Source: Macrostomum lignano | Taxonomy: Eukaryota | NCBI GenBank assembly: GCA_002269645.1 | Contig: NIVC01000347.1 | Location: 186,001 to 250,000, forward strand | Direction of reading: 5' to 3' | Length of the DNA stretch: 64,000 nt | Shown here: positions 95-51,477 of the stretch, piece by piece | Position numbering within the stretch: position 1 is the stretch's first letter | How the letters are laid out: every line of letters starts with the position of its first letter | The notes under the pieces: model-generated | Told to the model about the DNA's origin: nothing | The model's input: only the letters and a program-made list of their open reading frames with translations | The model's database searches: none | Translations under genes and position numbers: made by a program

Positions 95-960
95 TACAGT
101 GGACTCTCGGAATCTCAGAACAGTGGACTCTGAGAATGTTACAATAGTCGACTCTCAGCATCTCAATAGCGGACACTCAGAATCTCAATAGTAGATCATC
201 AGTATCTCAATAGTGGACTCCAGCATCTCAATAATGAACTCTCAGCATCTCAATAGTGGACTCTCAGCATCTGTATAGTAGACTCCCAGTATCTCAATAG
301 TAGACTCCCAGTATCTCAATAGTAGACTCCCAGCATCTCAATAGTAGACTCCCAGTATCTCAATAGTGGACTCTCAGCATCTCAATAGTAGACTCTCAGC
401 ATCTCAATAGTAGCCTCTCTGCATCTCAATAGTAGCCTCTCAGCATCTCAATAGTAGACTCTCAGCATCTCAATAGTAGCCTCTCTGCATCTCAATAGTG
501 AACTCTCAGCATCTCAATAGTGGACTATTAGCATCTCAATAGCGTACACTCAGCATCGCACAATAGTGGACTCTCAGAATCTCGAGAATAGACTCTCAGA
601 ATCTCACAACAGTAGACTATCAGAATCTCAACAGTGGACTCTAAGAATCTCAATACTGGACTCTTAGAATCTCAATAGTAGGTTCTCAGAATCTCAATAG
701 TGGAATCTCAGAATCTCACAAAAGTGGACTCTCAGAATCTCAATAATGGACTCTCAAAATCTCAATAGTGGACTCTTAAAATCTCAATAGTGGACTATTA
801 AAATGTCACAATATTGGACTCTCTAAATCTGACAATAGTGGACTCAGCATCTCAATAGTGGACTAAGAATCTCTCAATGGAGGACTTTCAGACTCACAAT
901 AGTGGACTCTCAGACTCTCAAAGTAATGGTCCCTCAGAATCTTACAAAAGTGAGTAGACT
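95..960 (+). repeat. ~22-bp minisatellite (CTCAGCATCTCAATAGTAGACT), probably intronic
   Basis: Degenerate tandem copies ending shortly before the acceptor at 1012. Confidence 0.9.
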
Positions 961-1012
961 AGGAATCGAACTCAGGACACTATTCGGGCCCCGCTCCCTC
1001 CTCACCGCGCAG

Positions 1013-2495
1013 GAGCACAGCGAAGTTCACCACCCGGACAAGACTGTGGTCATTCAAAAAGTGGAAGAATTATTTCTGAACTGCCGAACAGACAGCGACA
1101 ATGGCGATGATGAAGAGCAGCAACAAAAGCAAGAGGAAGCTGACAATGATGAAGAGGAGGCTGCAACAGGCGCCGATGGCACTGACTACAGCAGAGATGA
1201 GGAATTCTCAACAAAGTGGACAACTAACGCTGGCTCTGTCGGCGGTGGGAAGCGAGCCTGGGCTAGCGAGAAGAACACCAATAACCAGCAGATGAAGCAT
1301 CAGCAGCAGCAGTTCAGTCGCAAACGCCAATTCGGAGCCGCTGGCCAATCGTCAGCAGTCTCGCTGATGCAGCCGGGCTTCAACCGTCGCCCAATTGGTG
1401 GCCCGATGCAGCCGGTGCATTTGATGCAGAAACGATTGCGGCCGAACTGGAGCCAAGGTCAAGGAGTTCGGCAACAGCAGTTTGGCGGCGTGATGCAGCC
1501 GGATCTGGTTGTTCGAGATAAGGGCGATTACGTCATCAGCGTTAGCCGAGGCGGCTTAGAGGCTCGGCTTCGGTTCGATCCGGCATTCTATTCGTCTGAA
1601 GCTGCCAGCCAAACTTTTAATACTCTGGCCACTGAGCTGGCGTGGGAGCAGCTGAAAACTCGGCCCAAGCCAGGTGGCAAAAACGAATCCACTGAGCCAA
1701 GGATGACGTACTGGGTTGGGCCGAAATATTCCTACGGCTCGGTGCACCTGCCCGAGAATTCTAATTGGCATCCAGCGCTGATGCAGATTAAACAGGATGT
1801 TGAACGGGCGCTTGAGGGTAAAGTGACGTTTAACGCCTGCTTGGCAATTCTGTACAGGTGAGTAGGATACTGGATAGCTAACTACATCGTCTCTGAACCA
1901 GCGCTGATAATCCCCTATAAACACCCCCAAAACACGTAAACTCGTTAATCCCTGATAAACCCCCGCAAAACTCGCTTGTCCCAGATAAACACCATAAAAC
2001 TCTCTAATCCGAGGTAAACACCTCCAAAACTCGCTAGTCCCTGATAAACAGCAGAAACTCGCTAATCCCAGATAAACACCCCCAAAATTCGCTAGTCTCT
2101 GATAAACACCCTGATAAACACACCTCAGAGACCACAACGACTCGATGCCGTGGCACTCCGACAACGAACGCGAGATGGGTTCGAATCCGGCCATCGCCAG
2201 CGTCAGTTTCGGCGCCAGTCGACTCTTTGAGTTGCGCCGTTTCGACGTCGCTCAGCAGGGCTTCGGCGGTGGCGGCGGCGGCATCGGCGGAGTGGTCTTC
2301 GGCCAACAGATTCAAGGATTCCGCTCCGTCCACGTGCCCCTGTCTGCCGGCTCTCTGCTGTACACCTGCGGCTCCATCCAGAAGGACTGGCAGCACAGGA
2401 TCGGCCGGCAGTCCGCCAGTTGCGGACCCAGGATTAATCTCACTTTCCGCACCATTGTGACCGGTTCGGGCGGTTCGAAACGGACTGGGAAATGA
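1013..2495 (+). CDS. ALKBH3: AlkB homolog 3-like Fe(II)/2-oxoglutarate dioxygenase, 5'-partial; join(1013..1857,2129..2495)
   Basis: Donor AG|GTGAGT at 1858 and acceptor CTCAG| at 2128 join in frame to LYRDHNDSMPWHSDNE. HxD (WHSD), distal His (WQHRI) and RINLTFR are present. The ALKBH3-type N-terminal segment VVRDKGDYVISVSRGG..LRFDPAF and PRMTYWVG..YSYG are also seen. An in-frame acceptor lies at 1011-1012. Confidence 0.9.
1895..2125 (+). repeat. Degenerate ~30-bp tandem repeat filling the ALKBH3 intron
   Basis: Recurrent AAACTCGCTA.TCCC.GATAAACACC. Confidence 0.75.
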
Positions 2496-2604: not shown

Positions 2605-3320
2605 GCTGGGCCAGCCTCCCAAATCCTCAGTTGCTGAGCCAGCCTCCTAAATCATCGCGCAGTTCCTGTGCCAGCCTCCCAGATCCTCAGTTGCTAAGCC
2701 AGCCTCCAAGATCCTCAGTTGCTGCGCCAGCCTCCCAGATCCTCAGTTGCTAAGCCAGCCTCCCAGATCCTCAGTTGCTGCGCCAGCCTCCCAGATCCTC
2801 AGTTGCTAAGCCAGCCTCCCAGATCCTCAGTTGCTGTGCCAGCCTCCCAAATCCTCAGTTGCTGGGCCAGCCTCCCAGATCCTCAGTTGCTAAGTCAGCC
2901 TCCCAGATCCTCAGTTGCTGGGCCAGCCTCCCAGATCCTCAGTTGCTAAGCCAGCCTCCCAAATCCTCAGTTGCTAAGCCAGCCTTCCAGATCCTCAGTT
3001 GCTGTGCCAGCCTCCCAGATCCTCAGTTGCTGGGCCAGCCTCCCAAATCCTCAGTTGCTCGGCCAGCCTCCCAGATCCTCAGTTGCTAAGTCAGCCTCCC
3101 AGATCCTCAGTTGCTGGGCCAGCCTCCCAGAGTGTCAGTTGCTGTGCCAGCCTCCCAGATCCTCAGTTGCTGGGCCAGCCTCCCAAATCCTCAGTTGCTG
3201 GGCCAGCCTCCCAGATCCTCAGTTGCTAAGCCAGCCTCCCAAATCCTCAGTTGCTAAGCCAGCCTTCCAGATCCTCAGTTGCTAAGCCAGCCTCCCAGAT
3301 CCTCAGTTGCTAGGCCGCTG
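2605..3320 (+). repeat. 28-bp minisatellite (GCCAGCCTCCCAGATCCTCAGTTGCTGG), array 1
   Basis: ~25 tandem units starting ~110 nt after the ALKBH3 stop. Confidence 0.95.
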
Positions 3321-4618: not shown

Positions 4619-5230
4619 CCAGTTGCTGTGCCATCCTCCCAGATCCTCATGCAGTTGCTGGGCCAGCCTCCCAGATCCTCAGTTGCTGGGCCAGCCTCCC
4701 AGATCCTCAGTTGCTGGGCCAGCCTCCCAGATCCTCAGTTGCTGGGCCAGCCTCCCAGATCCTCAGTTGCTGGGCCAGCCTCCCAGATCCTCAGTTGCTG
4801 GGCCAGCCTCCCAGATCCTCAGTTGCTGGTCAGCCGCCTCCCAGATCCTCAGCTGCTGGGTCAGCCTCCCAGATCCTCCTTTGCTGGGCCAGCCTCCCAG
4901 ATCCTCAGTTGCTGGGTCAGCCGCCTCCCAGATCCTCATTTGCTGGGCCAGCCTCCCAGATTCTCAGTTTCTGGGCCAGCCTCCCAGATCCTCAGTTGCT
5001 GCTCCAGCCTACCAGATCCTCAGTTGCTGGGCCAGCCTCCCAGATCCTCAGTTGCTAAGCCAGCCTCCCAGATCCTCAGTTGCTAAGCCAGCCTCCCAGA
5101 TCCTCAGTTGCTGGGCCAGCCTCCCAGATCCTCAGTTGCTAAGCCAGCCTCCCAGATCCTCAGTTGCTGGGCCAGCCTCCCAGATCCTCAGTTGCTGGGC
5201 CAGCCTCCCAGATCCTCAGTTGCTGGGCCA
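4619..5230 (+). repeat. 28-bp minisatellite, array 2
   Basis: Same unit, with diagnostic variants. Confidence 0.95.
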
Positions 5231-5879: not shown

Positions 5880-6560
5880 CACCATCGGGTCTTTGGCATC
5901 TTACTTTGTCGCCATTGGGTCTTTGGCGCCATTGGATCTTACTGTGTCGCCATTGTGTCTTTGGCGCCATTGGATCTTACTTTGTCGCCATTGGGTCTTT
6001 GGCGCCATTGGATCTTACTTTGTCGCCATTGTGTCTTTGGCGCCATTGGATCTTACTTTGTCGCCATTGTGTCTTTGGCGCCATTGGATCTTACTTTGTC
6101 GCCATTGTGTCTTTGGCGCCATTGGATCTTACTTTGTCGCCATTGTGTCTTTAGCGCCATCGGATCTTACTTTGTCGCCATTGGGTCTTTAGCGCCATTG
6201 GATCTTACTTTGTCGCCATTGTGTCTTTGGCGCCATTGGATCTTACTTTGTCGCCATTGGGTCTTTGGCGCCATTGGATCTTACTTTGTCGCCATTGTGT
6301 CTTTGGCGCCATTGGATCTTACTTTGTCGCCATTGTGTCTTTGGCGCCATTGGATCTTACTTTGTCGCTATTGTGTCTTTAGCGCCATTGGATCTTACTT
6401 TGTCGCCATTGTGTCTTTGGCGCCATTGGATCTTACTTTGTCGCCATTGTGTCTTTGGCGCCACTAGATCTTAATTCGTCTCCATTGTGTCTTTGGCTCA
6501 ATTGGATCTTACTTTGTCGCCTTTGTGTCTTTGGCGCCATTCGATCTCAATATGTCGCCA
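5880..6560 (+). repeat. 38-bp minisatellite (TTGGATCTTACTTTGTCGCCATTGTGTCTTTGGCGCCA)
   Basis: ~17 tandem units. Confidence 0.95.
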
Positions 6561-7349
6561 TCAGGTCTTGTTTTGGCGCCTTGAATATACGTAAATGAAT
6601 ATAGTGTCAAAAGCAGATTCTCGTACAGTGCACAGCTGTATGACTGCAAAGGCTGCACGGAGCGATAAAAATGAAGTTAATTTCTAAGGGTTAGAGTTGG
6701 CGCCATTTTCAGCAGTTCTCAGAATAATGCACGTAAAACAACGATTTAGTCACGATCTGTCTCGATTACTGCGGTGGCCATATAGTGAACCAGTGCATGG
6801 TATTGATGGTGTACTTTTATTTTAGATTTAGTTTTGACAATCTACCGGTCGTTTGCGTCTCTTCGGCTTCTGGAAAAAATAAATTCGACATTTAAAAAGA
6901 AAAGAAAATGTCTCTGCAAGGTCGCGCAGACAGAATGCAGTGCACGCGCAATTCAGAAAACCAAGCTTGCAAGATAAAAAATAATGAATTGAAGCAACTG
7001 TTTGTTAAAAAAGAAGAGGTTCTGAAACAAAAACTAAAAAACATCCAGTCGGTGTTTCCTTGAAAGATCGAGCTAAGCCGGTCGAATTAGCGAAAATGAT
7101 CAGCTGTCTGCCACCGTGGCCTCGCCGCCTTACGTGACAGAAATAGTCGCTAAGATGATTGCAAACGCGCGTTGATGTGACTTGGAGATGAATGCGATGC
7201 AAAGTAGACAGGACAGCAGGGAAACTGCGTGTCTGTCTGCTGCAGCGGTGGCCCCTCAGTTTCCAGCTTACTGCAGCAAGGTCAAATGGGTTCAGTTCGC
7301 TTTTTAATTGGCTGTGGTTATTAGGCCTTGCATGCAGCTTACCTGCATC

Positions 7350-7917
7350 TGGTGGCCCGGCAACTGAGGAGCTGAGGCTGGCCCAGCAACTGAGGATCTG
7401 GTAGGCTGGAGCAGCAACTGAGGATTTGGGAGGCTGGCTCAGCAAATGAGGATCTGGGAGGCGGCTGACCCAGCAACTGAGGATCTGGGAGGCTGGCCCA
7501 GCAAAGGAGGATCTGGGAGGCTGACCCAGCAACTGAGGATCTGGGAGGCTGGCTCAGCAACTGAGGATCTGGGAGGCTGGCCCAGCAACTGAGGATCTGG
7601 GAGGCTGGCTCAGCAACTGAGGATCTGGGAGGCTGGCCCAGCAACTGAGGATCTGGGAGGCTGGCCCAGCAACTGAGGATCTGGGAGGCTGGCGCAGCAA
7701 CTGAGGATCTGGGAGGCTGGCTTAGCAACTGAGGATCTGGGAGGCGGCTGACCAGCAACTGAGGATCTGGGAGGCTGGCCCAGCAACTGAGGATCTGGGA
7801 GGCGGCTGACCAGCAACTGAGGATCTGGGAGGCTGGCCCAGCAACTGAGGATCTGGGAGGCTGGCCCAGCAACTGAGGATCTGGGAGGCTGGCCCAGCAA
7901 CTGAGGATCTGGGAGGC
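7350..7917 (-). repeat. 28-bp minisatellite, array 3 (inverted relative to array 2)
   Basis: Reverse-complement units. 7441-7530 is the exact reverse complement of 4855-4944. Confidence 0.95.
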
Positions 7918-8275
7918 TTGCAGTGGCAGTCATGTCTGACAAAGAAGTGCTTGAGTTTCCAGAGCCACGTTCAGTGCACGCCTAATAATCGGAGAGTATA
8001 AAGGACTCCCAATTTAATATCGGTTAATATCGAATTTTTTAAAAGAAAACATATCTAATATTGAGGCTTTGCACTTGATCGAAATCAGAGACGATATGCG
8101 GTTTGAAGCAAATGAGAACAGATGAACGGCATTCAAAAGTGGAAACGATGCTTGACTTCACTACGATCCCCAGAGATTGGGTCATTTGACGAGATGCCCA
8201 CTAAATGCTCGTATAATCATTAGAATTCTATCTTAGTAAGTGAAACTTATTGTAAAATCGGACTGTGTACAGTAG

Positions 8276-8900: not shown

Positions 8901-9409
8901 GTCTGGACATGTCTGGACACCCGGAGATTCTGCACCAGGAGAGCTGGCGGGGGCACAGATCTCTGTGTTTGGGTTTCTGTTCTCCAGAGTCAAAGATCTC
9001 CGGCCCGGAGATCCAACACGGAAAATTACGGGATTTTACGATCGCCTGCACGGATATCAGCAACCACGAAATAAGATAAGGTTAGAGATCGCCGCATCCT
9101 AGACTCTTCGGAGTGTTTTATCTTAGAAGCTTACTTCTAGCGCAGCTTAAAAGCTTATCTATCTAATAGCACATAGTACATTCCCATGCCTTGTATGCTC
9201 ATACAGCCATCAATCAAGTAGGGCTAAATTTAGGGTTGCATGGTCAGACTTGTGCATCATTTTTCGTCTCTCTGTACACAAGTCGAATGATTCGCACGCG
9301 ACAGTCAAGTCAATTTGCGATTTTCTTACTTTGAATTGGAGGGAATCTCCTGTTTTTTATTGGAACTGTATGCGGAATTATGGATTGACAACGGTTCACC
9401 TACCTCGGC

Positions 9410-9680
9410 GGTCTGGTGCCCCGTATGGAGGAGGGCCTCCGGCGTCGCGCAGAGGACTTGACTGGGCGGCCTTCCATTCGATCCGGGCCGTCCTCCAGTC
9501 CGAAGCGCTGCCCCGCCAGAGGGCTCGGCTGTGGCAGGCGGTGGTCGAAACCGTCCTGCTCTACAACGCCGAGACGTGGACGCTGACGGCTGTGCTGGAG
9601 CGGCAGTTGGACTCAGGGTTGCTCCGTGCGGCCTTTCGACCTGACGAGAGCGTCGGGACCGAGGCCCTGTACGATCGAGT
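9410..9680 (+). mobile_element. LINE (RTE-like) fragment, region C-terminal to RT
   Basis: WAAFHSIRAVL...LWQAVVETVLLYNAETWTLTAVLERQLD resembles the LLYGxETWTL post-RT motif. Confidence 0.65.
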
Positions 9681-10439
9681 TATTTTTCCCTGATCTGATG
9701 CATGACGGCCGCGAAATGTACCAGCTACAGTGAAGAACTTTATTTTCTCATGTGGAAAATGTCAATTCAAATGAACAAAGTTATTGACGTTTTTAGCGAT
9801 TTTTACCAACCATTTACATGTATGCTTCAATGAACATTGTTAAATTGTTAGGAGAAGTTAACTATACACAATAAAAAGATAATAATTTTCAACTTAATAA
9901 AACAAAATTAAAACTTGGTTTTTGCACTAGTGACGGAGATCTCCGAGGCGACAACAGATCGGGTTTAGGATCTCGGGATCTCGGAGACCCATAGCCGTTT
10001 GTAGTCTCCGAAAGTGATCTTAAACCCTTTAAAGTCTCCGATCGGCGATCCAAAACTGGCCTGAGCGTCGGAGATTCCATAAACCATAACACCGGTGAGT
10101 TCAGTCAAGGTCACGCCATAAACTCACTTCAACCTGCATTGCAGTATCTACACTATCGTCAATTTAGTCTCTTGGCAGAGCAGCATGAATTTTATACATA
10201 AATACATAAATGTTATTATATCCTTATGCTCACCTGGTTTACTTCCGTGTCGCCGTGGTCGTATAATGAGAGTGCAATCTAGCAGATCAGGGTGCGTAAG
10301 CTTATTAGTTCCCTATCTAAATTAGTCAACCTAATTCGCGCGTTTGATCTTGCCGCCAAATCCAACTGGAAACAGACTGTTAAACATTTACGACATCCCT
10401 GCGAACGAAATTATGTTTATGTATTAGGTTCAATCACAA

Positions 10440-14569: not shown

Positions 14570-17151
<2,582 letters not shown>

Positions 17152-17879
17152 GCTCAATTTTCAGGCCGAAATCTCACAGACTGAAATTTCGGGTAATTGT
17201 ACTGACGCAGGTGAAAACTGAAGCAATTTTTGGACTGTAGAAAAATAATCGTCTGAAATTTTGCGGCTATCAAACCGAGTTGCATTGTCTGTTGCCCAAG
17301 CAGAATTTCGCAAAGCCTTTATTAAAATCAGATTCAGGCTTTGAAAATTTCATGAAATCAGCGAATATTAATCCCCTGATGAGAAATTGTCGCCTCTAAT
17401 CTGCATAGTCTTTGTCGATAGATTAAACATTCGATTAAAACTGATTTCCGAATTCTAGAAAATCTTTCTTTTCAATTCCCAGCAACACGGAGGCTGGATG
17501 CGTCAGCCAGCACAAGCCCCCTCCCCTCAAAGCTTTAGCTGGATATATATGATGAGGCTGGGAAACTGGGGCAGAAATCGCTGGTAGAGGCTGGGATAAA
17601 GCTGCCCATGCAGCGGATGCAATCTGCAATCCAAGGCCGGCCTCAGAGAGCGAGTGTCTGTCTGCCTGACTTACCCGCCCTCTTCAAGCCGCGGTGTACA
17701 ATCGCGCGCTTTGAAAGCGGCAGGGCAGATGGAGATGCAGGACGCACTGCAGTTGCAGCGGACACCGAAGATAATGTTTCTCGCACTTCAGTCTTTTGTT
17801 TGTTTCAGACACTATGATTCAGGTGTGCTAGTGGAATATTTTGTCCGGGGAAGAAGTGAAAGGGTGAGAAGGAGATAGA

Positions 17880-19100
17880 GAGGATGAGATGATGGAAATA
17901 CAGAGGGTGAGAGTGAGGCAGAGAGGAAGAGAGGGAGATGGGGAGGGTGAGAGGGAGGCAGAGAGGAAGAGAGGGAGATGGGGAGGGTGAGAGGGAGGCA
18001 GAGAGGAAGAGAGGGAGATGGGGAGGGTGAGAGGGAGGCAGAGAGGAAGAGAGGGAGATGGGGAGGGTGAGAGGGAGGCAGAGAGGAAGAGAGGGAGATG
18101 GGGAGGGTGAGAGGGAGGCAGAGAGGAAGAGAGGGAGATGGGGAGGGTGAGAGGGAGGCAGAGAGGAAGAGAGGGAGATGGGGAGGGTGAGAGGGAGGCA
18201 GAGAGGAAGAGAGGGAGATGGGGAGGGTGAGAGGGAGGCAGAGAGGAAGAGAGGGAGATGGGGAGGGTGAGAGGGAGGCAGAGAGGAAGAGAGGGAGATG
18301 GGGAGGGTGAGAGGGAGGCAGAGAGGAAGAGAGGGAGATGGGGAGGGTGAGAGGGAGGCAGAGAGGAAGAGAGGGAGATGGGGAGGGTGAGAGGGAGGCA
18401 GAGAGGAAGAGAGGGAGATGGGGAGGGTGAGAGGGAGGCAGAGAGGAAGAGAGGGAGATGGGAGGGTGAGAGGGAGATAGAGAGGAAGAGAGGGAGATGG
18501 AGAGGGTGAGAGGGAGACAGAGAGGAAGAGAGGGAGATGGAGAGGGTGAGAGGGAGACAGAGAGGAAGAGAGGGAGATGGAGAGGGTGAGAGGGAGATAG
18601 AGAGGAAGAGAGGGAGATGGAGAGGGTGAGAGGGAGATAGAGAGGAAGAGAGGGAGATGGAGAGGGTGAGAGGGAGACAGAGAGGAAGAGAGGGAGATGG
18701 AGAGGGTGAGAGGGAGACAGAGAGGAAGAGAGGGAGATGGAGAGGGTGAGAGGGAGATAGAGAGGAAGAGAGGGAGATGGAGAGGGTGAGAGGGAGATAG
18801 AGAGGAAGAGAGGGAGATGGAGAGGGTGAGAGGGAGATAGAGAGGAAGAGAGGGAGATGGAGAGGGTGAGAGGGAGACAGAGAGGAAGAGAGGGAGATGG
18901 AGAGGGTGAGAGGGAGACAAATATGGTGAGAGGGAGACAGAGAGGAAGAGAGTGAGATGGAGAGGGTGAGAGGGAGACAAATATGGTGAGAGGGAGACAG
19001 AGAGGAAGAGAGGGAGATGGAGAGGGTGATGGGGAAGGCAGAGAGGATGGGGGGAGACAGAGAGGAAAAGAGGGCAATGGAGGGTGAGAGGGAGATGGAC
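17880..19100 (+). repeat. 40-bp purine-rich minisatellite (copy A; copy B at ~24050-25250)
   Basis: GGGAGGGTGAGAGGGAGGCAGAGAGGAAGAGAGGGAGATG units. Confidence 0.95.
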
Positions 19101-19852
19101 CGTGTGAGGGGAGCTTCTAGAAGGAGATGGAAGCGTGAGAAGCAGCCTGGAAAAGTAGAAATTGCGTTTGAAATCAGAACGCCTGATTCCCAGACCGGCT
19201 GCGCAGAGTAAATGACAGAGAAGGTCAAGTGGGATGGAGGGTGTGTCATGGCCAACCCCCCAGCCCCAGTGTAAGCAATTTCTGCTGAAGCAATTTCTGC
19301 AACAGAAAATCTCTGTTGCTGCTTTGGTGTAACTTTTAGTTTTCAGCGCCTTTTAGTTTTCAGTTCGGGACAGGCAGGACATGACTGGGATATGATTCAG
19401 AGGCCAAGAGGGAAATCCTTGAACGAGTTGGATGTTGCCCCCCGGATAGATGAGGTTCCGCGCACAGTCTTTACTGTTTATGTAATAACATCTATTTACT
19501 TGCACTTCTTTTTGAAAAGTTCTCAGTGCTCTGTTTTAATTTAATATTTGTTCTCAATTCTACGGGCGTAAATAACTTATTTGTTGAACTTTTCAAGATG
19601 CTTATTCATACACTTCTACGCTCTAAATCTGTTTTTCTATAGCACCTAACATCTTTAATATTTTTTGTGCAAGGCTTTAAGCTGCCAATCTTTAACCAAT
19701 CAGCGTGCTTCAACTCACGTTTTTAACTAATTATACGTACACATCTTTACTCAACACTGCTCAGTGCACCCCCAAAAGTAGCATATATATATATTGAAAT
19801 TATGTTGCAATAACTTCACTGCCAATATATTTGTTTTTAAACCCGAATAAAT

Positions 19853-19893
19853 AAACCCTGACGAAGGCCCAGTCTGGGCCGAAATATCGGTTT
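19853..19893 (+). ncRNA. Minimal type I hammerhead ribozyme, copy 1 (predicted cleavage after 19888)
   Basis: AAACC-CTGACGA-A-GGCCC(AGTCT)GGGCC-GAAA-TATC^GGTTT: CUGANGA and GAAA cores, 5-bp stem II, stem I AAACC/GGTTT, palindromic ATAT helix III, AUC triplet. Confidence 0.85.
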
Positions 19894-21218
19894 TTTTCGA
19901 ACATTCGACAACTGGTAACCTTCAATATCTTCCGAGTGCGTGGTTTGCAGTTTCAAACTGCCTTATGAATATCTGTACCCAGGACCGGACTATTATTGAG
20001 GCTCGCCATGTTTGTCAACAAAATATCTTCGTATACGAGCTATTCTCCGCCAAAAATCTACTTGGGATAAGCAAGAGTACTATTTCTGCAGCTGAATATT
20101 TAAGACGCACGACACTACTACGACTACGGCTACGACTACGACTGTACTACTACTACTCTACTACCACTACTACTACTACTGCAACTACTAGTGCTACTAC
20201 TACTGAAAATCTAGCTTCAACTGATCCGCAGTGCCCAGTCGCCTGTGACCAGGGGCTGTGCAGGCGGCGATCTGTGACCAGACGCCGCCAACTGCGACTA
20301 GTGGCCTGCCTGGCTACTTCAAATAACTGCTTACCAGTACGTCTCTACTACGACTACGCCTACGACTGCTCTACTACTACTCTACTAATACTTGTACTAC
20401 TACTACTTCCATTACTACTACTACGAGCTACTACTGCAACTACTAGTGCTACTACTACTGATAATCTAGCCTCAACTGATCTGCAGTGCCCAGTCGCCTG
20501 TGACCAGGGGCTGTGCAGGCGGCGATCTGTGACCAGACGCCGCCAACTGCGACTAGTGGCCTGCCTGGCTACTTCAAATAACTGCTTACCAGTACGTCTC
20601 TACTACGACTACGCCTACGACTGCTCTACTACTACTCTACTAATACTTGTACTACTACTACTTCCATTACTACTACTACGAGCTACTACTGCAACTACTA
20701 GTGCTACTACTACTGATAATCTAGCCTCAACTGATCTGCAGTGCCCAGTCGCCTGTGACCAGGGGCTGTGCAGGCGGCGATCTGTGACCAGACGCCGCCA
20801 ACTGCGACTAGTGGCCTGCCTGGCTACTCAATTTATTTACTGTTTATGTAATAACATCTATTTACTTGCACTTCTTTTTGAAAAGTTCTCAGTGCTCTGT
20901 TTTAATTTAATATTTGTTCTCAATTCTACGGGCGTAAATAACTTATTTGTTGAACTTTTCAAGATGCTTATTCATACACTTCTACGCTCTAAATCTGTTT
21001 TTCTATAGCACCTAACATCTTTAATATTTTTTGTGCAAGGCTTTAAGCTGCCAATCTTTAACCAATCAGCGTGCTTCAACTCACGTTTTTAACTAATTAT
21101 ACGTACACATCTTTACTCAACACTGCTCAGTGCACCCCCAAAAGTAGCATATATATATATTGAAATTATGTTACAATAACTTCACTGCCAATATATTTGT
21201 TTTTAAACCCGAATAAAT

Positions 21219-21259
21219 AAACCCTGACGAAGGCCCAGTCTGGGCCGAAATATCGGTTT
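21219..21259 (+). ncRNA. Minimal type I hammerhead ribozyme, copy 2 (predicted cleavage after 21254)
   Basis: Identical to copy 1, 1366 nt downstream. Confidence 0.85.
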
Positions 21260-22328
21260 TTTTCGAACATTCGACAACTGGTAACCTTCAATATCTTCCG
21301 AGTGCGTGGTTTGCAGTTTCAAACTGCCTTATGAATATCTGTACCCAGGACCGGACTATTATTGAGGCTCGCCATGTTTGTCAACAAAATATCTTCGTAT
21401 ACGAGCTATTCTCCGCCAAAAATCTACTTGGGATAAGCAAGAGTACTATTTCTGCAGCTGAATATTTAAGACGCACGACACTACTACGACTACGGCTACG
21501 ACTACGACTGTACTACTACTACTCTACTACCACTACTACTACTACTGCAACTACTAGTGCTACTACTACTGAAAATCTAGCTTCAACTGATCCGCAGTGC
21601 CCAGTCGCCTGTGACCAGGGGCTGTGCAGGCGGCGATCTGTGACCAGACGCCGCCAACTGCGACTAGTGGCCTGCCTGGCTACTTCAAATAACTGCTTAC
21701 CAGTACGTCTCTACTACGACTACGCCTACGACTGCTCTACTACTACTCTACTAATACTTGTACTACTACTACTTCCATTACTACTACTACGAGCTACTAC
21801 TGCAACTACTAGTGCTACTACTACTGATAATCTAGCCTCAACTGATCTGCAGTGCCCAGTCGCCTGTGACCAGGGGCTGTGCAGGCGGCGATCTGTGACC
21901 AGACGCCGCCAACTGCGACTAGTGGCCTGCCTGGCTACTCAATTTATTTACTGTTTATGTAATAACATCTATTTACTTGCACTTCTTTTTGAAAAGTTCT
22001 CAGTGCTCTGTTTTAATTTAATATTTGTTCTCAATTCTACGGGCGTAAATAACTTATTTGTTGAACTTTTCAAGATGCTTATTCATACACTTCTACGCTC
22101 TAAATCTGTTTTTCTATAGCACCTAACATCTTTAATATTTTTTGTGCAAGGCTTTAAGCTGCCAATCTTTAACCAATCAGCGTGCTTCAACTCACGTTTT
22201 TAACTAATTATACGTACACATCTTTACTCAACACTGCTCAGTGCACCCCAAAAGTAGCATATATATATATTGAAATTATGTTACAATAACTTCACTGCCA
22301 ATATATTTGTTTTTAAACCCGAATAAAT

Positions 22329-22369
22329 AAACCCTGACGAAGGCCCAGTCTGGGCCGAAATATCGGTTT
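22329..22369 (+). ncRNA. Minimal type I hammerhead ribozyme, copy 3 (predicted cleavage after 22364)
   Basis: Identical to copy 1, 1110 nt downstream of copy 2. Confidence 0.85.
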
Positions 22370-22445
22370 TTTTCGAACATTCGACAACTGGTAACCTTCA
22401 ATATCTTCCGAGTGCGTGGTTTGCAGTTTCAAACTGCCTTATGAA

Positions 22446-22449
<4 letters not shown>

Positions 22450-22510
<61 letters not shown>

Positions 22511-22627
22511 GTCTATCTATCTATCTATCTGTCTATCTATCTATCTGTCTATCTGTCTATCTATCTATCTATCTATCTGTCTATCTATCTATCTATCTAT
22601 CTGTCTATCTATCTATCTGTCTATCTG

Positions 22628-22698
<71 letters not shown>

Positions 22699-22701
22699 GT
22701 C

Positions 22702-22750
<49 letters not shown>

Positions 22751-22751
22751 C

Positions 22752-22799
<48 letters not shown>

Positions 22800-22852
22800 C
22801 CTATCTATCTATCTATCTATCTATCTATTTATCTATCTATTTATCTATCTAC

Positions 22853-22894
<42 letters not shown>

Positions 22895-22916
22895 GTCTGT
22901 CTATCTATCTATCTAC

Positions 22917-22959
<43 letters not shown>

Positions 22960-22964
22960 CCTAC

Positions 22965-23030
<66 letters not shown>

Positions 23031-23143
23031 GTCTATCTATCTATCTATCTGTCTATCTATCTATCTGTCTATCTGTCTATCTATCTATCTATCTATCTGT
23101 CTATCTATCTATCTATCTGTCTATCTATCTATCTGTCTATCTG

Positions 23144-23218
<75 letters not shown>

Positions 23219-23219
23219 G

Positions 23220-23302
<83 letters not shown>

Positions 23303-25620
23303 GCTCAATTTTCAGGCCGAAATCTCACAGACTGAAATTTCGGGTAATTGTACTGACGCAGGTGAAAACTGAAGCAATTTTTGGACTGTAGAAAAATAAT
23401 CGTCTGAAATTTTGCGGCTATCAAACCGAGTTGCATTGTCTGTTGCCCAAGCAGAATTTCGCAAAGCCTTTATTAAAATCAGATTCAGGCTTTGAAAATT
23501 TCATGAAATCAGCGAATATTAATCCCCTGATGAGAAATTGTCGCCTCTAATCTGCATAGTCTTTGTCGATAGATTAAACATTCGATTAAAACTGATTTCC
23601 GAATTCTAGAAAATCTTTCTTTTCAATTCCCAGCAACACGGAGGCTGGATGCGTCAGCCAGCACAAGCCCCCTCCCCTCAAAGCTTTAGCTGGATATATA
23701 TGATGAGGCTGGGAAACTGGGGCAGAAATCGCTGGTAGAGGCTGGGATAAAGCTGCCCATGCAGCGGATGCAATCTGCAATCCAAGGCCGGCCTCAGAGA
23801 GCGAGTGTCTGTCTGCCTGACTTACCCGCCCTCTTCAAGCCGCGGTGTACAATCGCGCGCTTTGAAAGCGGCAGGGCAGATGGAGATGCAGGACGCACTG
23901 CAGTTGCAGCGGACACCGAAGATAATGTTTCTCGCACTTCAGTCTTTTGTTTGTTTCAGACACTATGATTCAGGTGTGCTAGTGGAATATTTTGTCCGGG
24001 GAAGAAGTGAAAGGGTGAGAAGGAGATAGAGAGGATGAGATGATGGAAATACAGAGGGTGAGAGTGAGGCAGAGAGGAAGAGAGGGAGATGGGGAGGGTG
24101 AGAGGGAGGCAGAGAGGAAGAGAGGGAGATGGGGAGGGTGAGAGGGAGGCAGAGAGGAAGAGAGGGAGATGGGGAGGGTGAGAGGGAGGCAGAGAGGAAG
24201 AGAGGGAGATGGGGAGGGTGAGAGGGAGGCAGAGAGGAAGAGAGGGAGATGGGGAGGGTGAGAGGGAGGCAGAGAGGAAGAGAGGGAGATGGGGAGGGTG
24301 AGAGGGAGGCAGAGAGGAAGAGAGGGAGATGGGGAGGGTGAGAGGGAGGCAGAGAGGAAGAGAGGGAGATGGGGAGGGTGAGAGGGAGGCAGAGAGGAAG
24401 AGAGGGAGATGGGGAGGGTGAGAGGGAGGCAGAGAGGAAGAGAGGGAGATGGGGAGGGTGAGAGGGAGGCAGAGAGGAAGAGAGGGAGATGGGGAGGGTG
24501 AGAGGGAGGCAGAGAGGAAGAGAGGGAGATGGGGAGGGTGAGAGGGAGGCAGAGAGGAAGAGAGGGAGATGGGGAGGGTGAGAGGGAGGCAGAGAGGAAG
24601 AGAGGGAGATGGGGAGGGTGAGAGGGAGATAGAGAGGAAGAGAGGGAGATGGAGAGGGTGAGAGGGAGACAGAGAGGAAGAGAGGGAGATGGAGAGGGTG
24701 AGAGGGAGACAGAGAGGAAGAGAGGGAGATGGAGAGGGTGAGAGGGAGATAGAGAGGAAGAGAGGGAGATGGAGAGGGTGAGAGGGAGATAGAGAGGAAG
24801 AGAGGGAGATGGAGAGGGTGAGAGGGAGACAGAGAGGAAGAGAGGGAGATGGAGAGGGTGAGAGGGAGACAGAGAGGAAGAGAGGGAGATGGAGAGGGTG
24901 AGAGGGAGATAGAGAGGAAGAGAGGGAGATGGAGAGGGTGAGAGGGAGATAGAGAGGAAGAGAGGGAGATGGAGAGGGTGAGAGGGAGATAGAGAGGAAG
25001 AGAGGGAGATGGAGAGGGTGAGAGGGAGACAGAGAGGAAGAGAGGGAGATGGAGAGGGTGAGAGGGAGACAAATATGGTGAGAGGGAGACAGAGAGGAAG
25101 AGAGTGAGATGGAGAGGGTGAGAGGGAGACAAATATGGTGAGAGGGAGACAGAGAGGAAGAGAGGGAGATGGAGAGGGTGATGGGGAAGGCAGAGAGGAT
25201 GGGGGGAGACAGAGAGGAAAAGAGGGCAATGGAGGGTGAGAGGGAGATGGACCGTGTGAGGGGAGCTTCTAGAAGGAGATGGAAGCGTGAGAAGCAGCCT
25301 GGAAAAGTAGAAATTGCGTTTGAAATCAGAACGCCTGATTCCCAGACCGGCTGCGCAGAGTAAATGACAGAGAAGGTCAAGTGGGATGGAGGGTGTGTCA
25401 TGGCCAACCCCCAGCCCCAGTGTAAGCAATTTCTGCTGAAGCAATTTCTGCAACAGAAAATCTCTGTTGCTGCTTTGGTGTAACTTTTAGTTTTCAGCGC
25501 CTTTTAGTTTTCAGTTCGGGACAGGCAGGACATGACTGGGATATGATTCAGAGGCCAAGAGGGAAATCCTTGAACGAGTTGGATGTTGCCCCCCGGATAG
25601 ATGAGGTTCCGCGCACAGTC
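22450..25620 (+). repeat. Copy B of the ~3.15-kb direct segmental duplication
   Basis: Both copies end GTTCCGCGCACAGTC. Copy B continues into unique sequence at 25621. Confidence 0.9.
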
Positions 25621-26952: not shown

Positions 26953-42504
<15,552 letters not shown>

Positions 42505-42636: not shown

Positions 42637-42775
42637 TAGACATTCAAATTGGCGCCACTTTTAAAGACATTCAAATTGGCGCCACTTTTAAAGACCTTCA
42701 AATTGGCGCCACTTTTAAAGACATTCAAATTGGCGCCACTGTTAAAGACATTCAAATTAGCGCAACTTGGACTAT
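42637..42775 (+). repeat. 27-bp tandem repeat (GACATTCAAATTGGCGCCACTTTTAAA) in the probable KCNK 3' UTR
   Basis: ~5 units between the stop (42504) and AATAAA (42874-42879). Confidence 0.9.
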
Positions 42776-46764: not shown

Positions 46765-47785
46765 ACTGAGGATCTGGGAGGCTGGCCCAGCAACTGAGGA
46801 TCTGGGAGGCTGGCCCAGCAACTGAGGATTTGGGAGGCTGGCCCAGCAACTGAGGATCTGGGAGGCTGGCCCAGCAACTGAGGATCTGGGAGGCTGGCTC
46901 AGCAACTGAGGATCTGGGAGGCTGGCTCAGCAACTGAGGATCTGGGAGGCTGGCCCAGCAACTGAAGATCTGGGAGGCTGGCCCAGCAACTGAGAATCTG
47001 GGAGGCTGGCCCAGCAACTGAGGATCTGGGAGGCTGGCTCAGCAACTGAGGATCTGGGAGGCTGGCTCAGCAACTGAGGATCTGGGAGGCTGGCTCAGCA
47101 ACTGAGGATCTGGGAGGCTGGCCCAGCAACTGAGAATCTGGGAGGCTGGCCCAGCAACTGAGAATCTGGGAGGCTGGCCCAGCAACTGAGAATCTGGGAG
47201 GCTGGCCCAGCAACTGAGGATCTGGGAGGCTGGCCCAGCAACTGAGGATCTGGGAGGCTGGCCTAGCAACTGAGGATCTGGGAGGCTGGCCCAGCAACTG
47301 AGGATCTGGGAGGCTGGCCCAGCAACTGAGGATCTGGGAGGCTGGCTCAGCAACTGAGGATCTGGGAGGCTGGCTCAGCAACTGAGGATCTGGGAGGCTG
47401 GCTCAGCAACTGAGGATCTGGGAGGCTGGCCCAGCAACTGAGGATCTGGGAGGCTGGCTCAGCAACTGAGGATTTGGGAGGCTGGCCCAGCAACTGAGGA
47501 TCTGGGAGGCTGGCCCAGCAACTGAGGATCTGGGAGGCTGGCCCAGCAACTGAGGATCTGGGAGGCTGGCTCAGCAACTGAGGATCTGGGAGGCTGGCCC
47601 AGCAACTGAGGATCTGGGAGGCTGGCCCAGCAACTGAGGATCTGGGAGGCTGGCCCAGCAACTGAGGATCTGGGAGGCTGGCCCAGCAACTGAAGATCTG
47701 GGAGGCTGGCCCAGCAACTGAGGATCTGGGAGGCTGGCTCAGCAACTGAGGATCTGGGAGGCTGGCACAGCAATTGAGGATCTGG
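46765..47785 (-). repeat. 28-bp minisatellite, array 4, directly downstream of the ATF2-like stop
   Basis: Same unit as arrays 1-3, ~36 copies. Confidence 0.95.
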
Positions 47786-47830
47786 GGTCGTCCTCCATCA
47801 GTCCCTGCAACAGCCAGCCAGTCCAATAAA

Positions 47831-50800: not shown

Positions 50801-51477
50801 ACAGTCGGTCTGAGCACAGTTGATAAAGATGCAGCCGCAGAAGCTGTGGCGGCGGTGGCTGCAACGGAACTGGAGGTGATGGTGTTGGCCAGCAGCTGCA
50901 GTCCGGGCACCTCGCTAGGACCAGACGAAGCCACGTCCAATCTTGGCATCTTTGTCGGCGACAGATCCAACGGGGTACTTCTACTAGCCGATGACAGGAC
51001 CTCCTTGATCATGGGGGTGCTGATTTTGGCATTGAGGATATCTGGCGTGGGAACAGACTCTATCCAGGAGGCGGAGTTAGCCGCAGCAGACGCTGCTGCC
51101 GCTGATGAAGAGGCTGTCGGCTGCTGGTGCTTCTGCAGGTTAAACTGCTTGAACGAAGCCTCAAACGGGTTGGTGCTGCCCCCGCCGTTGCCTCCGTTCG
51201 ATGGTACGGCAGAAAGATTCAATAAGCCGGTGAGGCCCATGGAACCGGTGTCCAGGGTGACCACAGGTGATAGGGAAATCACCGGCGTGTCCAGAACTTT
51301 ACCCCGAAGCTCCTTCATTGGCGACGGAGTGTCCAGCGACACGGTGGCGGTGGCTTCGGGTTTGGTGTAAAGCGGCAGTGTGGAGTGCACCTTCAATCGG
51401 TGCTGAGTCAACTCCATATTGGAGCTGAAAGATTTGCCGCAGGTTTCACAGGCTAAACCAGCAGATTTGGAAGCCAT
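47831..51477 (-). CDS. ATF2: ATF2/ATF7/CREB5-like transcription factor (N-terminal C2H2 finger, C-terminal bZIP), 628 aa; complement(join(47831..48124,49220..49891,50557..51477))
   Basis: CETCGKSF..HRLKVH finger, DTPSP phospho-motif, NPFEASFK, basic region ERRKLLLERNRAAAARCREKRK. The zipper continues across a phase-0 intron as RNESQ|ALRQALLQHRSC (cf. ATF2 HKDC). Both donors are GTGAGT. Confidence 0.9.
48145..49213 (+). repeat. 24-bp minisatellite (GATCTGGYAGCTAAAGGAAYCAAG) filling ATF2-like intron 2
   Basis: ~44 units covering nearly all of intron 48125-49219. Confidence 0.96.
49901..50545 (+). repeat. 32-bp minisatellite (CTGAGTAGGGTGAGCATCAATCAGAGTCAGAT) filling ATF2-like intron 1
   Basis: 20 units covering nearly all of intron 49892-50556. 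Confidence 0.96.

What the first reader, a model, noticed from the sequence alone, without database searches (positions are those of the whole stretch)
19853..22369. Three tandem minimal type I hammerhead ribozymes with a palindromic helix III
Seen: three identical motifs (19853, 21219, 22329) AAACC CTGACGA A GGCCC-AGTCT-GGGCC GAAA TATC^GGTTT. They contain the full catalytic core, stem II, stem I and an AUC site, while helix III is only the loopless palindrome ATAT. Established: Penelope-like elements and metazoan retrozymes carry such minimal type I hammerheads, which cleave as dimers through the palindrome. Inference: neighbouring copies in one transcript could pair in cis and release monomers of 1366 and 1110 nt.
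Basis: partly seen in the sequence, partly recalled or inferred. Interest (0 to 1): 0.85.

Follow-up and report, generated by a model that had tools for sequence, protein, structure and literature searches.

The report
Tandem minimal hammerhead ribozymes, Penelope-type repeat
A 3-kb tandem repeat in an animal genome carries three identical copies of the stripped-down hammerhead ribozyme typical of Penelope-like retroelements and animal retrozymes; the motif is real, but it is an ordinary member of a very common, already described class, and nothing here shows that it cleaves.

Summary
Three identical 41-nt motifs start at 19853, 21219 and 22329 (+). Each has the complete hammerhead core, a 5-bp helix I, a 5-6-bp helix II, an AUC cleavage site, and only AUAU in place of helix III.

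The motif also shows the hallmarks published for the minimal hammerheads of Penelope-like elements (PLEs): an unpaired base between A9 and G10.1, a G10.1-C11.1 pair and a palindromic 15.2-16.2.

The motifs sit in a 2.5-unit head-to-tail array (19470-22450). It has no reverse transcriptase or endonuclease reading frame. It ends 86 nt past the last cleavage site, against a (TATC)n microsatellite, and lies about 4.5 kb upstream of a K2P potassium-channel gene.

My best reading is a non-coding, PLE-derived retrozyme-like element.

The limits:
- The units are almost identical, so there is only one independent occurrence and no covariation.
- Rfam hammerhead models do not score the motif.
- Nearest-neighbour energies do not favour a 4-bp all-A/U dimer helix.
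- No related copies could be retrieved, and cleavage is untested.

The units (1110 and 1366 nt) are longer than reported animal retrozymes. I rate it a new member of a known kind, of modest interest.

The parts
19470..22450 (+). The whole head-to-tail array. Counted from cleavage sites it is a 419-nt 3' part of a unit, a 1366-nt unit, a 1110-nt unit and an 86-nt start of a further unit. Counted from the array's 3' end it is a 505-nt 5'-truncated copy plus two full copies.
   Evidence: Self-BLAST, unit alignment and the left junction read.
19853..19893 (+). Minimal type-I hammerhead copy 1. C17 is at 19888, so the predicted 5'-OH end is at 19889.
21219..21259 (+). Minimal type-I hammerhead copy 2. 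C17 is at 21254, so the predicted 5'-OH end is at 21255.
22329..22369 (+). Minimal type-I hammerhead copy 3. C17 is at 22364, so the predicted 5'-OH end is at 22365.
19889..21254 (+). Cleavage-to-cleavage unit 1 (1366 nt). It carries 2.7 copies of the internal 255-nt repeat.
21255..22364 (+). Cleavage-to-cleavage unit 2 (1110 nt). It carries one internal 255-nt repeat fewer than unit 1.
20143..20828 (+). Internal 255-nt tandem repeat made of (ACT)n-like triplets plus a GC-rich hairpin-forming segment. It accounts for the size difference between the units and for the long spurious reading frame.
   Evidence: Tandem Repeats Finder. The reading frame 19965-21008 has no Pfam match.
22322..22331 (+). 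AATAAATAAA, two overlapping poly(A)-signal hexamers that form the 5' strand of the extended helix I. A run of seven T follows the cleavage site at 22367-22373. The same sequences occur in the other two copies.
   Evidence: Read from the sequence. The extended helix I is seen in the fold.
22162..22270 (+). Two CCAAT motifs (22162-22166 and 22173-22177) and a (TA)n TATA-like stretch (22260-22270), 60-170 nt upstream of the hammerhead. They could be an internal promoter; this rests on motifs only.
   Evidence: Read from the sequence. Not tested.
22446..23302 (+). (TATC)n microsatellite abutting the 3' end of the array. The junction shares a TATCT microhomology with the unit.

Best explanation
The array is a non-coding, tandemly arranged retroelement derivative of the Penelope-like element / non-LTR retrozyme kind. 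Each unit carries one PLE-type minimal type-I hammerhead.

Proposed mechanism (inferred):
- RNA polymerase II reads through at least two units, possibly from the CCAAT/TATA-like stretch just upstream of a hammerhead.
- A single motif cannot close helix III, because A15.1 and U16.1 would enclose only two nucleotides.
- Two motifs in the same transcript, or in two transcripts, therefore swap strands. The 5' helix I strand and core of one motif pair with the AUAU and the 3' helix I strand of the other. This builds a 4-bp helix III and two active sites.
- Cleavage after C17 (19888, 21254, 22364) releases 1366-nt and 1110-nt RNAs with 5'-OH and 2',3'-cyclic phosphate ends.
- A tRNA ligase could circularise these RNAs, and a PLE reverse transcriptase supplied in trans could copy them back into DNA.

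Shown here: the motif anatomy, the tandem architecture, the absence of coding capacity and the intergenic position. Inferred: transcription, dimer formation, cleavage, circularisation and mobility.
For: Motif anatomy:
- All conserved core positions are present (C3 U4 G5 A6 N7 G8 A9, G12 A13 A14, A15.1/U16.1, C17), with helix I open and helix II closed.
- The unpaired A between A9 and G10.1, the G10.1-C11.1 pair, the palindromic 15.2-16.2, the 5-bp helix I and the 5-6-bp helix II match the published hallmarks of PLE minimal hammerheads (PMC4209133).
- An extra nucleotide at that same position also occurs in clear phage hammerheads retrieved with the same helix II pattern.

Chance:
- About 0.002 strict descriptor hits are expected per window, and none of 1.5 million trials was as good as this motif.

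Architecture:
- The array is a 5'-truncated copy followed by full copies that share one 3' end about 86 nt past the hammerhead, next to a microsatellite.
- This fits published PLE features: partial tandems, 5' truncation, hammerheads near the 3' end and a microsatellite insertion bias (PMC8557442; PMC8969392).
- It meets the operational definition of an active non-LTR retrozyme in Li et al. [quoted passage not shown] The value here is -14.4.

Other:
- There is no RT or EN reading frame. The only long frame runs through triplet repeats and has no Pfam hit.
- The array is intergenic, about 4.5 kb upstream of K2P exon 1. This matches the reported intergenic enrichment of retrozymes.
- The circular 1110-nt RNA folds better than shuffles (z = -3.15).
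Against: - No Rfam hammerhead model scores the motif, even in a 71-nt slice at E<=10. The same gathering-threshold search also missed clear phage hammerheads, so this is weak evidence.
- The three copies are effectively one observation. The units differ by one substitution and two indels, so there is no covariation and no sign of selection.
- No other copy, intact or degenerate, is in the window.
- No related copy could be retrieved. The metagenome hits share the core but lack the UC right after AUAU. Prokaryotic genomes gave nothing.
- In the nearest-neighbour model, the AUAU/AUAU helix makes the double hammerhead 3.6 kcal/mol less stable than the same fold without it (-24.4 versus -28.0). 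In the 1453-nt cis transcript, the double-hammerhead fold costs 18.5 kcal/mol over the minimum-energy fold.
- Published PLE minimal hammerheads cleave poorly in vitro.
- No PLE reading frame was found in the reading frames sampled from the window.
- The units are longer than any reported animal retrozyme, and only 48% of the circular RNA is paired, unlike the highly self-paired small retrozyme circles.
Confidence: 0.72

Rival explanations
1. The array is a dead relic. The hammerhead is a genuine PLE-derived motif, but the array arose and persists only through DNA-level tandem duplication (unequal exchange or replication slippage) in a satellite-rich region. It is neither transcribed nor cleaved, so it is a fossil with no present function.
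For: The units are almost identical and differ by a 255-nt repeat-number change, which is typical of slippage. The array sits at the junction of a 6151-bp local duplication in a window packed with mini- and microsatellites. There is no autonomous partner in the window. The energetics of the dimer are unfavourable, and this class has low reported in-vitro activity.
Against: All 41 positions of the motif are intact in all three copies, but so is nearly everything else, so this is uninformative. The 5'-truncated-plus-full-copies layout, with a common 3' end at a microsatellite, looks like a PLE-type insertion rather than a random duplication.
Confidence: 0.2
2. The match is a chance hammerhead look-alike. 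The AATAAATAAA ... TTTTTTT context is simply an A/T-rich poly(A)-signal or terminator region of a repeat, and the core match is a coincidence multiplied by duplication.
For: There is only one independent occurrence. Two AATAAA hexamers lie 10-40 nt upstream of a U-rich run, which is the layout of an animal poly(A) site. Rfam models give no hit. The loosest form of the descriptor would be expected to hit some tens of times by chance in a gigabase genome (extrapolated).
Against: A motif this good (Watson-Crick pairs only, a GC-rich 5-6-bp helix II and a palindromic centre) was never produced in 1.5 million trials or 300 shuffles. It also carries features not required by the descriptor (the extra base at 9/10.1 and the G10.1-C11.1 pair) that mark real PLE hammerheads. 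It also sits once per unit of a tandem repeat, which is the expected context.
Confidence: 0.05
3. The array is the pseudo-LTR remnant of an autonomous PLE whose RT-EN reading frame was deleted locally. It would then be a decayed PLE insertion rather than a distinct non-autonomous (retrozyme) family.
For: The motif is the PLE-type minimal hammerhead, and the partial-tandem architecture is the same.
Against: Two complete units of 1.1-1.4 kb repeat head to tail with no trace of coding sequence between hammerheads. PLE hammerheads are typically about 3 kb apart, flanking the reading frame. A local deletion would have had to precede the duplication of the unit.
Confidence: 0.15

Closest known systems
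Minimal hammerheads (min-HHRs) in the pseudo-LTRs of metazoan Penelope-like elements (Cervera & de la Pena 2014, PMC4209133; Lunse, Weinberg & Breaker 2017, cited in PMC6765202)
   Same: Type-I topology and a full catalytic core. There is no real helix III, only the four palindromic positions 15.1-16.1. An unpaired nucleotide sits between A9 and G10.1, G10.1 pairs with C11.1, helix I is short and helix II is long and GC-rich. The motifs occur in direct tandem copies, so two can form a dimeric ribozyme.
   Different: There is no RT/GIY-YIG reading frame between the copies. The spacing is 1.1-1.4 kb rather than about 3 kb. The dimer helix III would be four A-U pairs only. Association with a PLE in this genome could not be tested.
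Animal non-LTR retrozymes (Cervera & de la Pena 2020, PMC7229834; Li, Clavereau & Pollet 2026, bioRxiv 10.64898/2026.07.22.740005)
   Same: Non-coding head-to-tail repeats with one type-I hammerhead per unit, GC below 50%, an intergenic position, a proposed origin from PLE pseudo-LTRs, and dimer-dependent cleavage in the amphibian families.
   Different: Reported units are 170-400 nt, with consensus lengths of 51-972 bp in the 2026 survey. That survey used a tandem-repeat finder capped at a period of 1000. Here the units are 1110 and 1366 nt. Most invertebrate retrozymes have canonical hammerheads with loop-loop contacts, whereas this one is the minimal type. The predicted circular RNA is only 48% paired.
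Hammerhead-bearing satellite DNAs (newt satellite 2, Schistosoma Sm-alpha)
   Same: Tandem genomic repeats that encode type-I hammerheads with a weak helix III. These were later reinterpreted as retrozymes.
   Different: Those have 1-2-bp helix III stems with tetraloops, conserved loop 1-loop 2 contacts, units of about 330 bp and very high copy number. Here only 2.5 units are seen.

Membership tests
Hammerhead ribozyme (any type) | Conserved core: C3 U4 G5 A6 N7 G8 A9, G12 A13 A14, A15.1 / U16.1, and H17 (not G) at the cleavage site | tested here: met
   CUGACGA ... GAA A..U C read directly in all three copies. One extra A lies between A9 and G10.1, a variation known in natural hammerheads and seen in the phage examples.
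Hammerhead ribozyme (any type) | Three helices around the core | tested here: inconclusive
   Helix I (5 bp, extendable) and helix II (5-6 bp) form in the minimum-energy fold. Helix III cannot form in a monomer, because the loop would be only 2 nt. It exists only as a 4-bp intermolecular AUAU duplex, which the nearest-neighbour model does not favour.
Hammerhead ribozyme (any type) | Match to the curated Rfam covariance models (Hammerhead_1, Hammerhead_3, HH9, HH10, Hammerhead_II) | tested here: not met
   No hammerhead hit at the gathering score, at E<=10 over 3 kb or at E<=10 over a 71-nt slice. The gathering search also missed clear phage hammerheads, so the test has low sensitivity for short variants.
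Hammerhead ribozyme (any type) | Site-specific self-cleavage | not testable with these tools
   Needs in-vitro transcription or RNA end mapping.
PLE-type minimal hammerhead (Cervera & de la Pena 2014) | [quoted passage not shown] | tested here: met
   A at 9/10.1, G-C at the base of helix II, AUAU, 5-bp helix I and 5-6-bp helix II, compared with the published list. Helix II is at the low end of the reported 6-8 bp.
PLE-type minimal hammerhead (Cervera & de la Pena 2014) | Location in the pseudo-LTR of an element encoding RT and a GIY-YIG endonuclease | tested here: not met
   There is no such reading frame in the array. None was found among the 20 window reading frames (at least 114 aa) that were scanned with Pfam. 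The rest of the genome could not be examined.
PLE-type minimal hammerhead (Cervera & de la Pena 2014) | Genome-wide consensus families with compensatory changes in the helices | not testable with these tools
   Only this window is available. No further copy was found in it, and no true relatives were found in the searchable collections.
Animal non-LTR retrozyme | Head-to-tail non-coding repeats with at least two consecutive units, each carrying a complete type-I hammerhead (motif folding energy below -5 kcal/mol) | tested here: met
   Three motifs in consecutive units. Motif folding energy is -14.4 kcal/mol.
Animal non-LTR retrozyme | Unit size 170-400 nt (up to 972 bp in the 2026 survey) | tested here: not met
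   The units are 1110 and 1366 nt. The survey's upper bound is partly technical, because it capped the tandem-repeat period at 1000.
Animal non-LTR retrozyme | Expression as abundant, highly self-paired linear and circular RNAs | tested here: inconclusive
   Circular fold of -247.3 kcal/mol, z = -3.15 against 40 shuffles, but only 48% of bases paired. Expression cannot be tested here.
PLE-type insertion architecture | A 5'-truncated copy in tandem with full copies sharing one 3' terminus, often at a microsatellite | tested here: inconclusive
   The layout fits. However, the left edge of the array coincides with the junction of a 6151-bp local duplication, so the truncation may not date from insertion.

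The most novel reading that the evidence does not exclude
This would be a new size class of animal retrozyme: an ORF-less, PLE-derived element of more than 1 kb. Its minimal hammerheads, with a helix III of only four A-U pairs, would release and circularise 1.1-1.4-kb RNAs. These are several times larger than any animal retrozyme circle described, and they are invisible to current pipelines that cap the repeat period at 1 kb. In addition, the 5' strand of helix I doubles as two AAUAAA poly(A) signals followed by a U-run. Ribozyme cleavage and polyadenylation would then compete for the same 50 nt and decide between circular and linear fates.
Probability: 0.1. Interest if true: 0.5.

Novelty: new member of a known kind. 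Interest (0 to 1): 0.3.

Why it matters
If active, the element would extend the size range of hammerhead-processed circular RNAs in animals beyond 1 kb. It would also be a further case linking ORF-less tandem repeats to Penelope-like elements. In addition, it shows that surveys relying on Rfam models or on tandem-repeat finders capped at a 1-kb period miss such loci. Otherwise it is one more instance of a motif class already known to occur in thousands of copies in many animal genomes.

Tried and rejected
- Rfam searches gave no hammerhead hit: gathering score over the whole window, E<=10 over 3 kb and E<=10 over 71 nt. The only hits were noise (mir-34 and bacterial sRNAs).
- A scan of IMG/VR with the core and helix II pattern returned six phage contigs with good hammerheads of a different topology. 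They are not relatives.
- The metagenome scan returned 14 low-GC, eukaryote-like contigs with CUGANGA-U-GGCCC-N5-GGGCC-GAAAUAUG. They lack the UC directly after AUAU. Their helix I pairing is not consistent in either a type-I or a type-III reading, and they carry no RT reading frame. I did not use them as homologues.
- The scan of prokaryotic genomes gave 0 hits.
- My own covariance model of the motif found no diverged copy in the window.
- Attempts to identify the organism failed. A protein search with the bZIP exon gave nothing. Exact-protein look-ups of the unit's reading frame and of a host exon gave nothing.
- Lunse et al. 2017 could not be read.
- The 262/347-aa reading frame in the unit was rejected as coding. 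It runs through ACT/CTA/TAC triplet repeats, which contain no stop in any plus-strand frame, and it has no Pfam match.
- A viroid-like or HDV-like replicon was considered and rejected. No ribozyme was found on the minus strand and there is no coding capacity.
Full report
**Observation**

The pattern CTGACGANGGCCCNNNNNGGGCCGAAA occurs three times in the window, at 19858, 21224 and 22334 on the + strand, with no mismatches and none expected in shuffles. The sequence gives the full 41-nt motif AAACC-CUGACGA-A-GGCCC-AGUCU-GGGCC-GAA-AUAU-C^GGUUU at 19853, 21219 and 22329.

In standard hammerhead numbering:
- 2.5-2.1 = AAACC.
- C3 U4 G5 A6 C7 G8 A9, followed by one extra A.
- Helix II is GGCCC/GGGCC, or 6 bp if the A-U pair is included, closed by a 3-5-nt loop.
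- G12 A13 A14, then A15.1 U15.2 A16.2 U16.1, then C17.
- 1.1-1.5 = GGUUU.

The ends lie in helix I, so the topology is type I. The cleavage triplet is AUC. The predicted 5' ends are at 19889, 21255 and 22365, and the spacings are 1366 and 1110 nt.

**More than chance?**

A descriptor written for this purpose required:
- helix I of at least 5 bp;
- CUGANGA, then 0-1 extra nucleotide;
- helix II of at least 4 bp with a 3-8-nt loop;
- GAAA, then 0-6 nt, then U and H.

It finds only these three sites on either strand. In 300 dinucleotide shuffles of the window it found no strict hits and two relaxed hits.

A first-order Markov simulation conditioned on the 129 CUGANGA cores in the window gives about 0.002 strict chance hits per window. 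Many of those cores come from a 28-mer minisatellite. None of 1.5 million trials produced a motif as good as this one, meaning Watson-Crick pairs only, helix II of at least 5 bp and a palindromic centre.

The three copies are one event, however. The units differ by one substitution (19807 G versus A), one 1-nt indel and one 255-nt internal repeat. The triple occurrence adds no statistical weight and there is no covariation.

**What the motif is**

Cervera & de la Pena 2014 (PMC4209133) defined the minimal hammerhead of metazoan Penelope-like elements (PLEs). They listed features that emerged without being part of their search descriptor:
- a conserved G10.1-C11.1 pair;
- palindromic 15.2-16.2.

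They also describe these motifs as having a short helix I (4-5 bp) and a long helix II.

All are present here. An extra nucleotide at that same position also occurs in the clear phage hammerheads that my helix II pattern retrieved from IMG/VR.

Rfam's hammerhead models do not score the motif at the gathering threshold, at E<=10 over 3 kb or in a 71-nt slice. The same gathering-threshold search also missed those phage hammerheads. I therefore read this as low sensitivity for short variants, not as evidence against the motif.

**The element**

Self-comparison shows a head-to-tail array at 19470-22450:
- a 419-nt 3' part of a unit;
- a 1366-nt unit;
- a 1110-nt unit;
- 86 nt of a further unit.

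The size difference between the units comes from one more copy of an internal 255-nt repeat, made of ACT-like triplets plus a GC-rich hairpin segment.

Counted from the array's 3' end, the layout is one 5'-truncated copy (505 nt) followed by two full copies that share the same 3' end. The hammerhead lies 86-122 nt from that end. The end joins a (TATC)n microsatellite through a TATCT microhomology.

This matches what is described for PLE insertions: 5' truncation, partial tandems that form pseudo-LTRs, hammerheads near the 3' end and a bias for microsatellites (PMC8557442; PMC8969392).

There is no RT or endonuclease reading frame. The only long frame (262 or 347 aa) runs through triplet repeats that lack stop codons in all plus-strand frames, and it has no Pfam match. 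The other reading frames I scanned from the window gave only host-gene domains. A covariance model built from the motif found no diverged copy elsewhere in the window.

**Genomic context**

The window is animal DNA, extremely rich in micro- and minisatellites. It contains:
- an ALKBH-like exon at 902-1861;
- a two-pore potassium channel (K2P) gene, with exon 1 near 26990-27120, the P1 exon at 29579-29983, and further exons at 40270 and 41731-42504;
- a bZIP/zinc-finger gene on the minus strand at 49211-51477.

The array is therefore intergenic, about 4.5 kb upstream of the channel gene and on the same strand.

The organism could not be identified.

**How it most likely works**

A monomer cannot form helix III, because A15.1-U16.1 would enclose only two nucleotides. 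The published model for such motifs is a strand-swapped double hammerhead. The core and 5' helix I strand of one copy combine with the 16.x strand, C17 and 3' helix I strand of the other. In this way AUAU pairs with AUAU.

In a read-through transcript, the two sites 1.1-1.4 kb apart would release unit-length RNAs. By analogy with retrozymes, a tRNA ligase could then circularise them.

Every step of this mechanism is inference. The energetics are not encouraging:
- The double hammerhead scores -24.4 kcal/mol, against -28.0 for the same fold without the four A-U pairs.
- Forcing the double hammerhead in the 1453-nt cis transcript costs 18.5 kcal/mol over the minimum-energy fold.
- Published PLE minimal hammerheads cleave poorly in vitro, even as dimers.

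The circular 1110-nt RNA is more stable than shuffles (z = -3.15) but only 48% paired.

Two further sequence features are worth recording:
- The 5' strand of the extended helix I is AAUAAAUAAA, which holds two poly(A) hexamers, and the 3' strand runs into a run of seven U.
- Two CCAAT motifs and a (TA)n stretch lie 60-170 nt upstream of each hammerhead.

These could be a poly(A) site and an internal promoter. Neither was tested.

**Comparison with known systems**

The motif is a member of the PLE-type minimal hammerheads by every sequence criterion I could test. The defining genomic association, a pseudo-LTR of an element with an RT-EN reading frame, is not met in this window.

The array meets the operational definition of an active non-LTR retrozyme used by Li et al. 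2026. It falls outside the reported size range: 170-400 nt in PMC7229834 and 51-972 bp in the 2026 preprint. That preprint's pipeline capped the repeat period at 1000. The motif is also of the minimal type, whereas most invertebrate retrozymes have canonical hammerheads.

The 2026 preprint argues that animal retrozymes are non-autonomous PLE derivatives. This locus fits that picture.

**Verdict**

Catalysis and mobility are unproven.

The finding is a new member of a known and very abundant kind. Two mild peculiarities stand out: units longer than 1 kb, and a dimer helix III made only of A-U pairs. Interest is modest (0.3).

Noticed in passing
window 17100-19469 and 23251-25620: A 2.37-kb segment is repeated at 99.9% identity with a period of 6151 bp. 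It comprises the end of a (TATC)n array, a 709-bp unique stretch, a 40-mer minisatellite and a 404-bp unique stretch. The hammerhead array fills the space between the copies, and its left edge (19469/19470) is exactly the duplication junction. The layout therefore reads S-[array]-S-Z. This could be a very long target duplication, integration of a circular DNA, or an assembly artefact.
   Followed up: partly
window 1-64000 (e.g. 2605-3311, 4620-5230, 7353-7918, 46765-47786): The window is unusually dense in micro- and minisatellites (Tandem Repeats Finder lists 50 rows). The same 28-mer array (ACTGAGGATCTGGGAGGCTGGCCCAGCA) recurs at four places in both orientations, which suggests a dispersed element with an internal minisatellite. 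Several other arrays share a GGCGCCA motif (5893-6561, 39470-40105, 42638-42768).
   Followed up: no
window 26990-27120, 29579-29983, 40270-40420, 41731-42504 (+): These are exons of a two-pore-domain potassium channel gene, with Ion_trans_2 matches and the M1 motif GAVIFDMIE. Its introns are filled with satellites. The hammerhead array lies about 4.5 kb upstream on the same strand.
   Followed up: partly
window 49211-51477 (-) and 902-1861 (+): A bZIP transcription factor gene with an N-terminal C2H2 zinc finger (ATF2-like layout) and an exon of a 2OG-Fe(II) oxygenase (AlkB-like). A protein search with the bZIP exon and an exact look-up of the zinc-finger exon's product returned nothing, so the organism stays unidentified.
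   Followed up: partly
L001-L006 (e.g. L003 6180-6250, L005 7539-7565 and 8943-8969): IMG/VR phage contigs carry good hammerheads with an extra U between A9 and G10.1 and the same GGCCC/GGGCC helix II, placed just upstream of ATG start codons. L005 has two copies 1.4 kb apart. Rfam's gathering-threshold search finds none of them.
   Followed up: partly
L007-L020 (JGI metagenome contigs): Fourteen low-GC (0.33-0.41), ORF-poor, eukaryote-like contigs share CUGANGA-U-GGCCC-N5-GGGCC-GAAAUAUG. One contig holds a leucine-rich-repeat-like reading frame. Helix I pairing is inconsistent in both a type-I and a type-III reading, so it is unclear whether they are ribozymes. From memory, the sample ids look like insect-gut metagenomes (not verified).
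   Followed up: partly
window 9250-9693 (+): A reading frame with a C-terminal stretch (…VLLYNAETWTL…) that, from memory, resembles the tail of LINE reverse transcriptases. It has no Pfam match, so this is unverified.
   Followed up: partly
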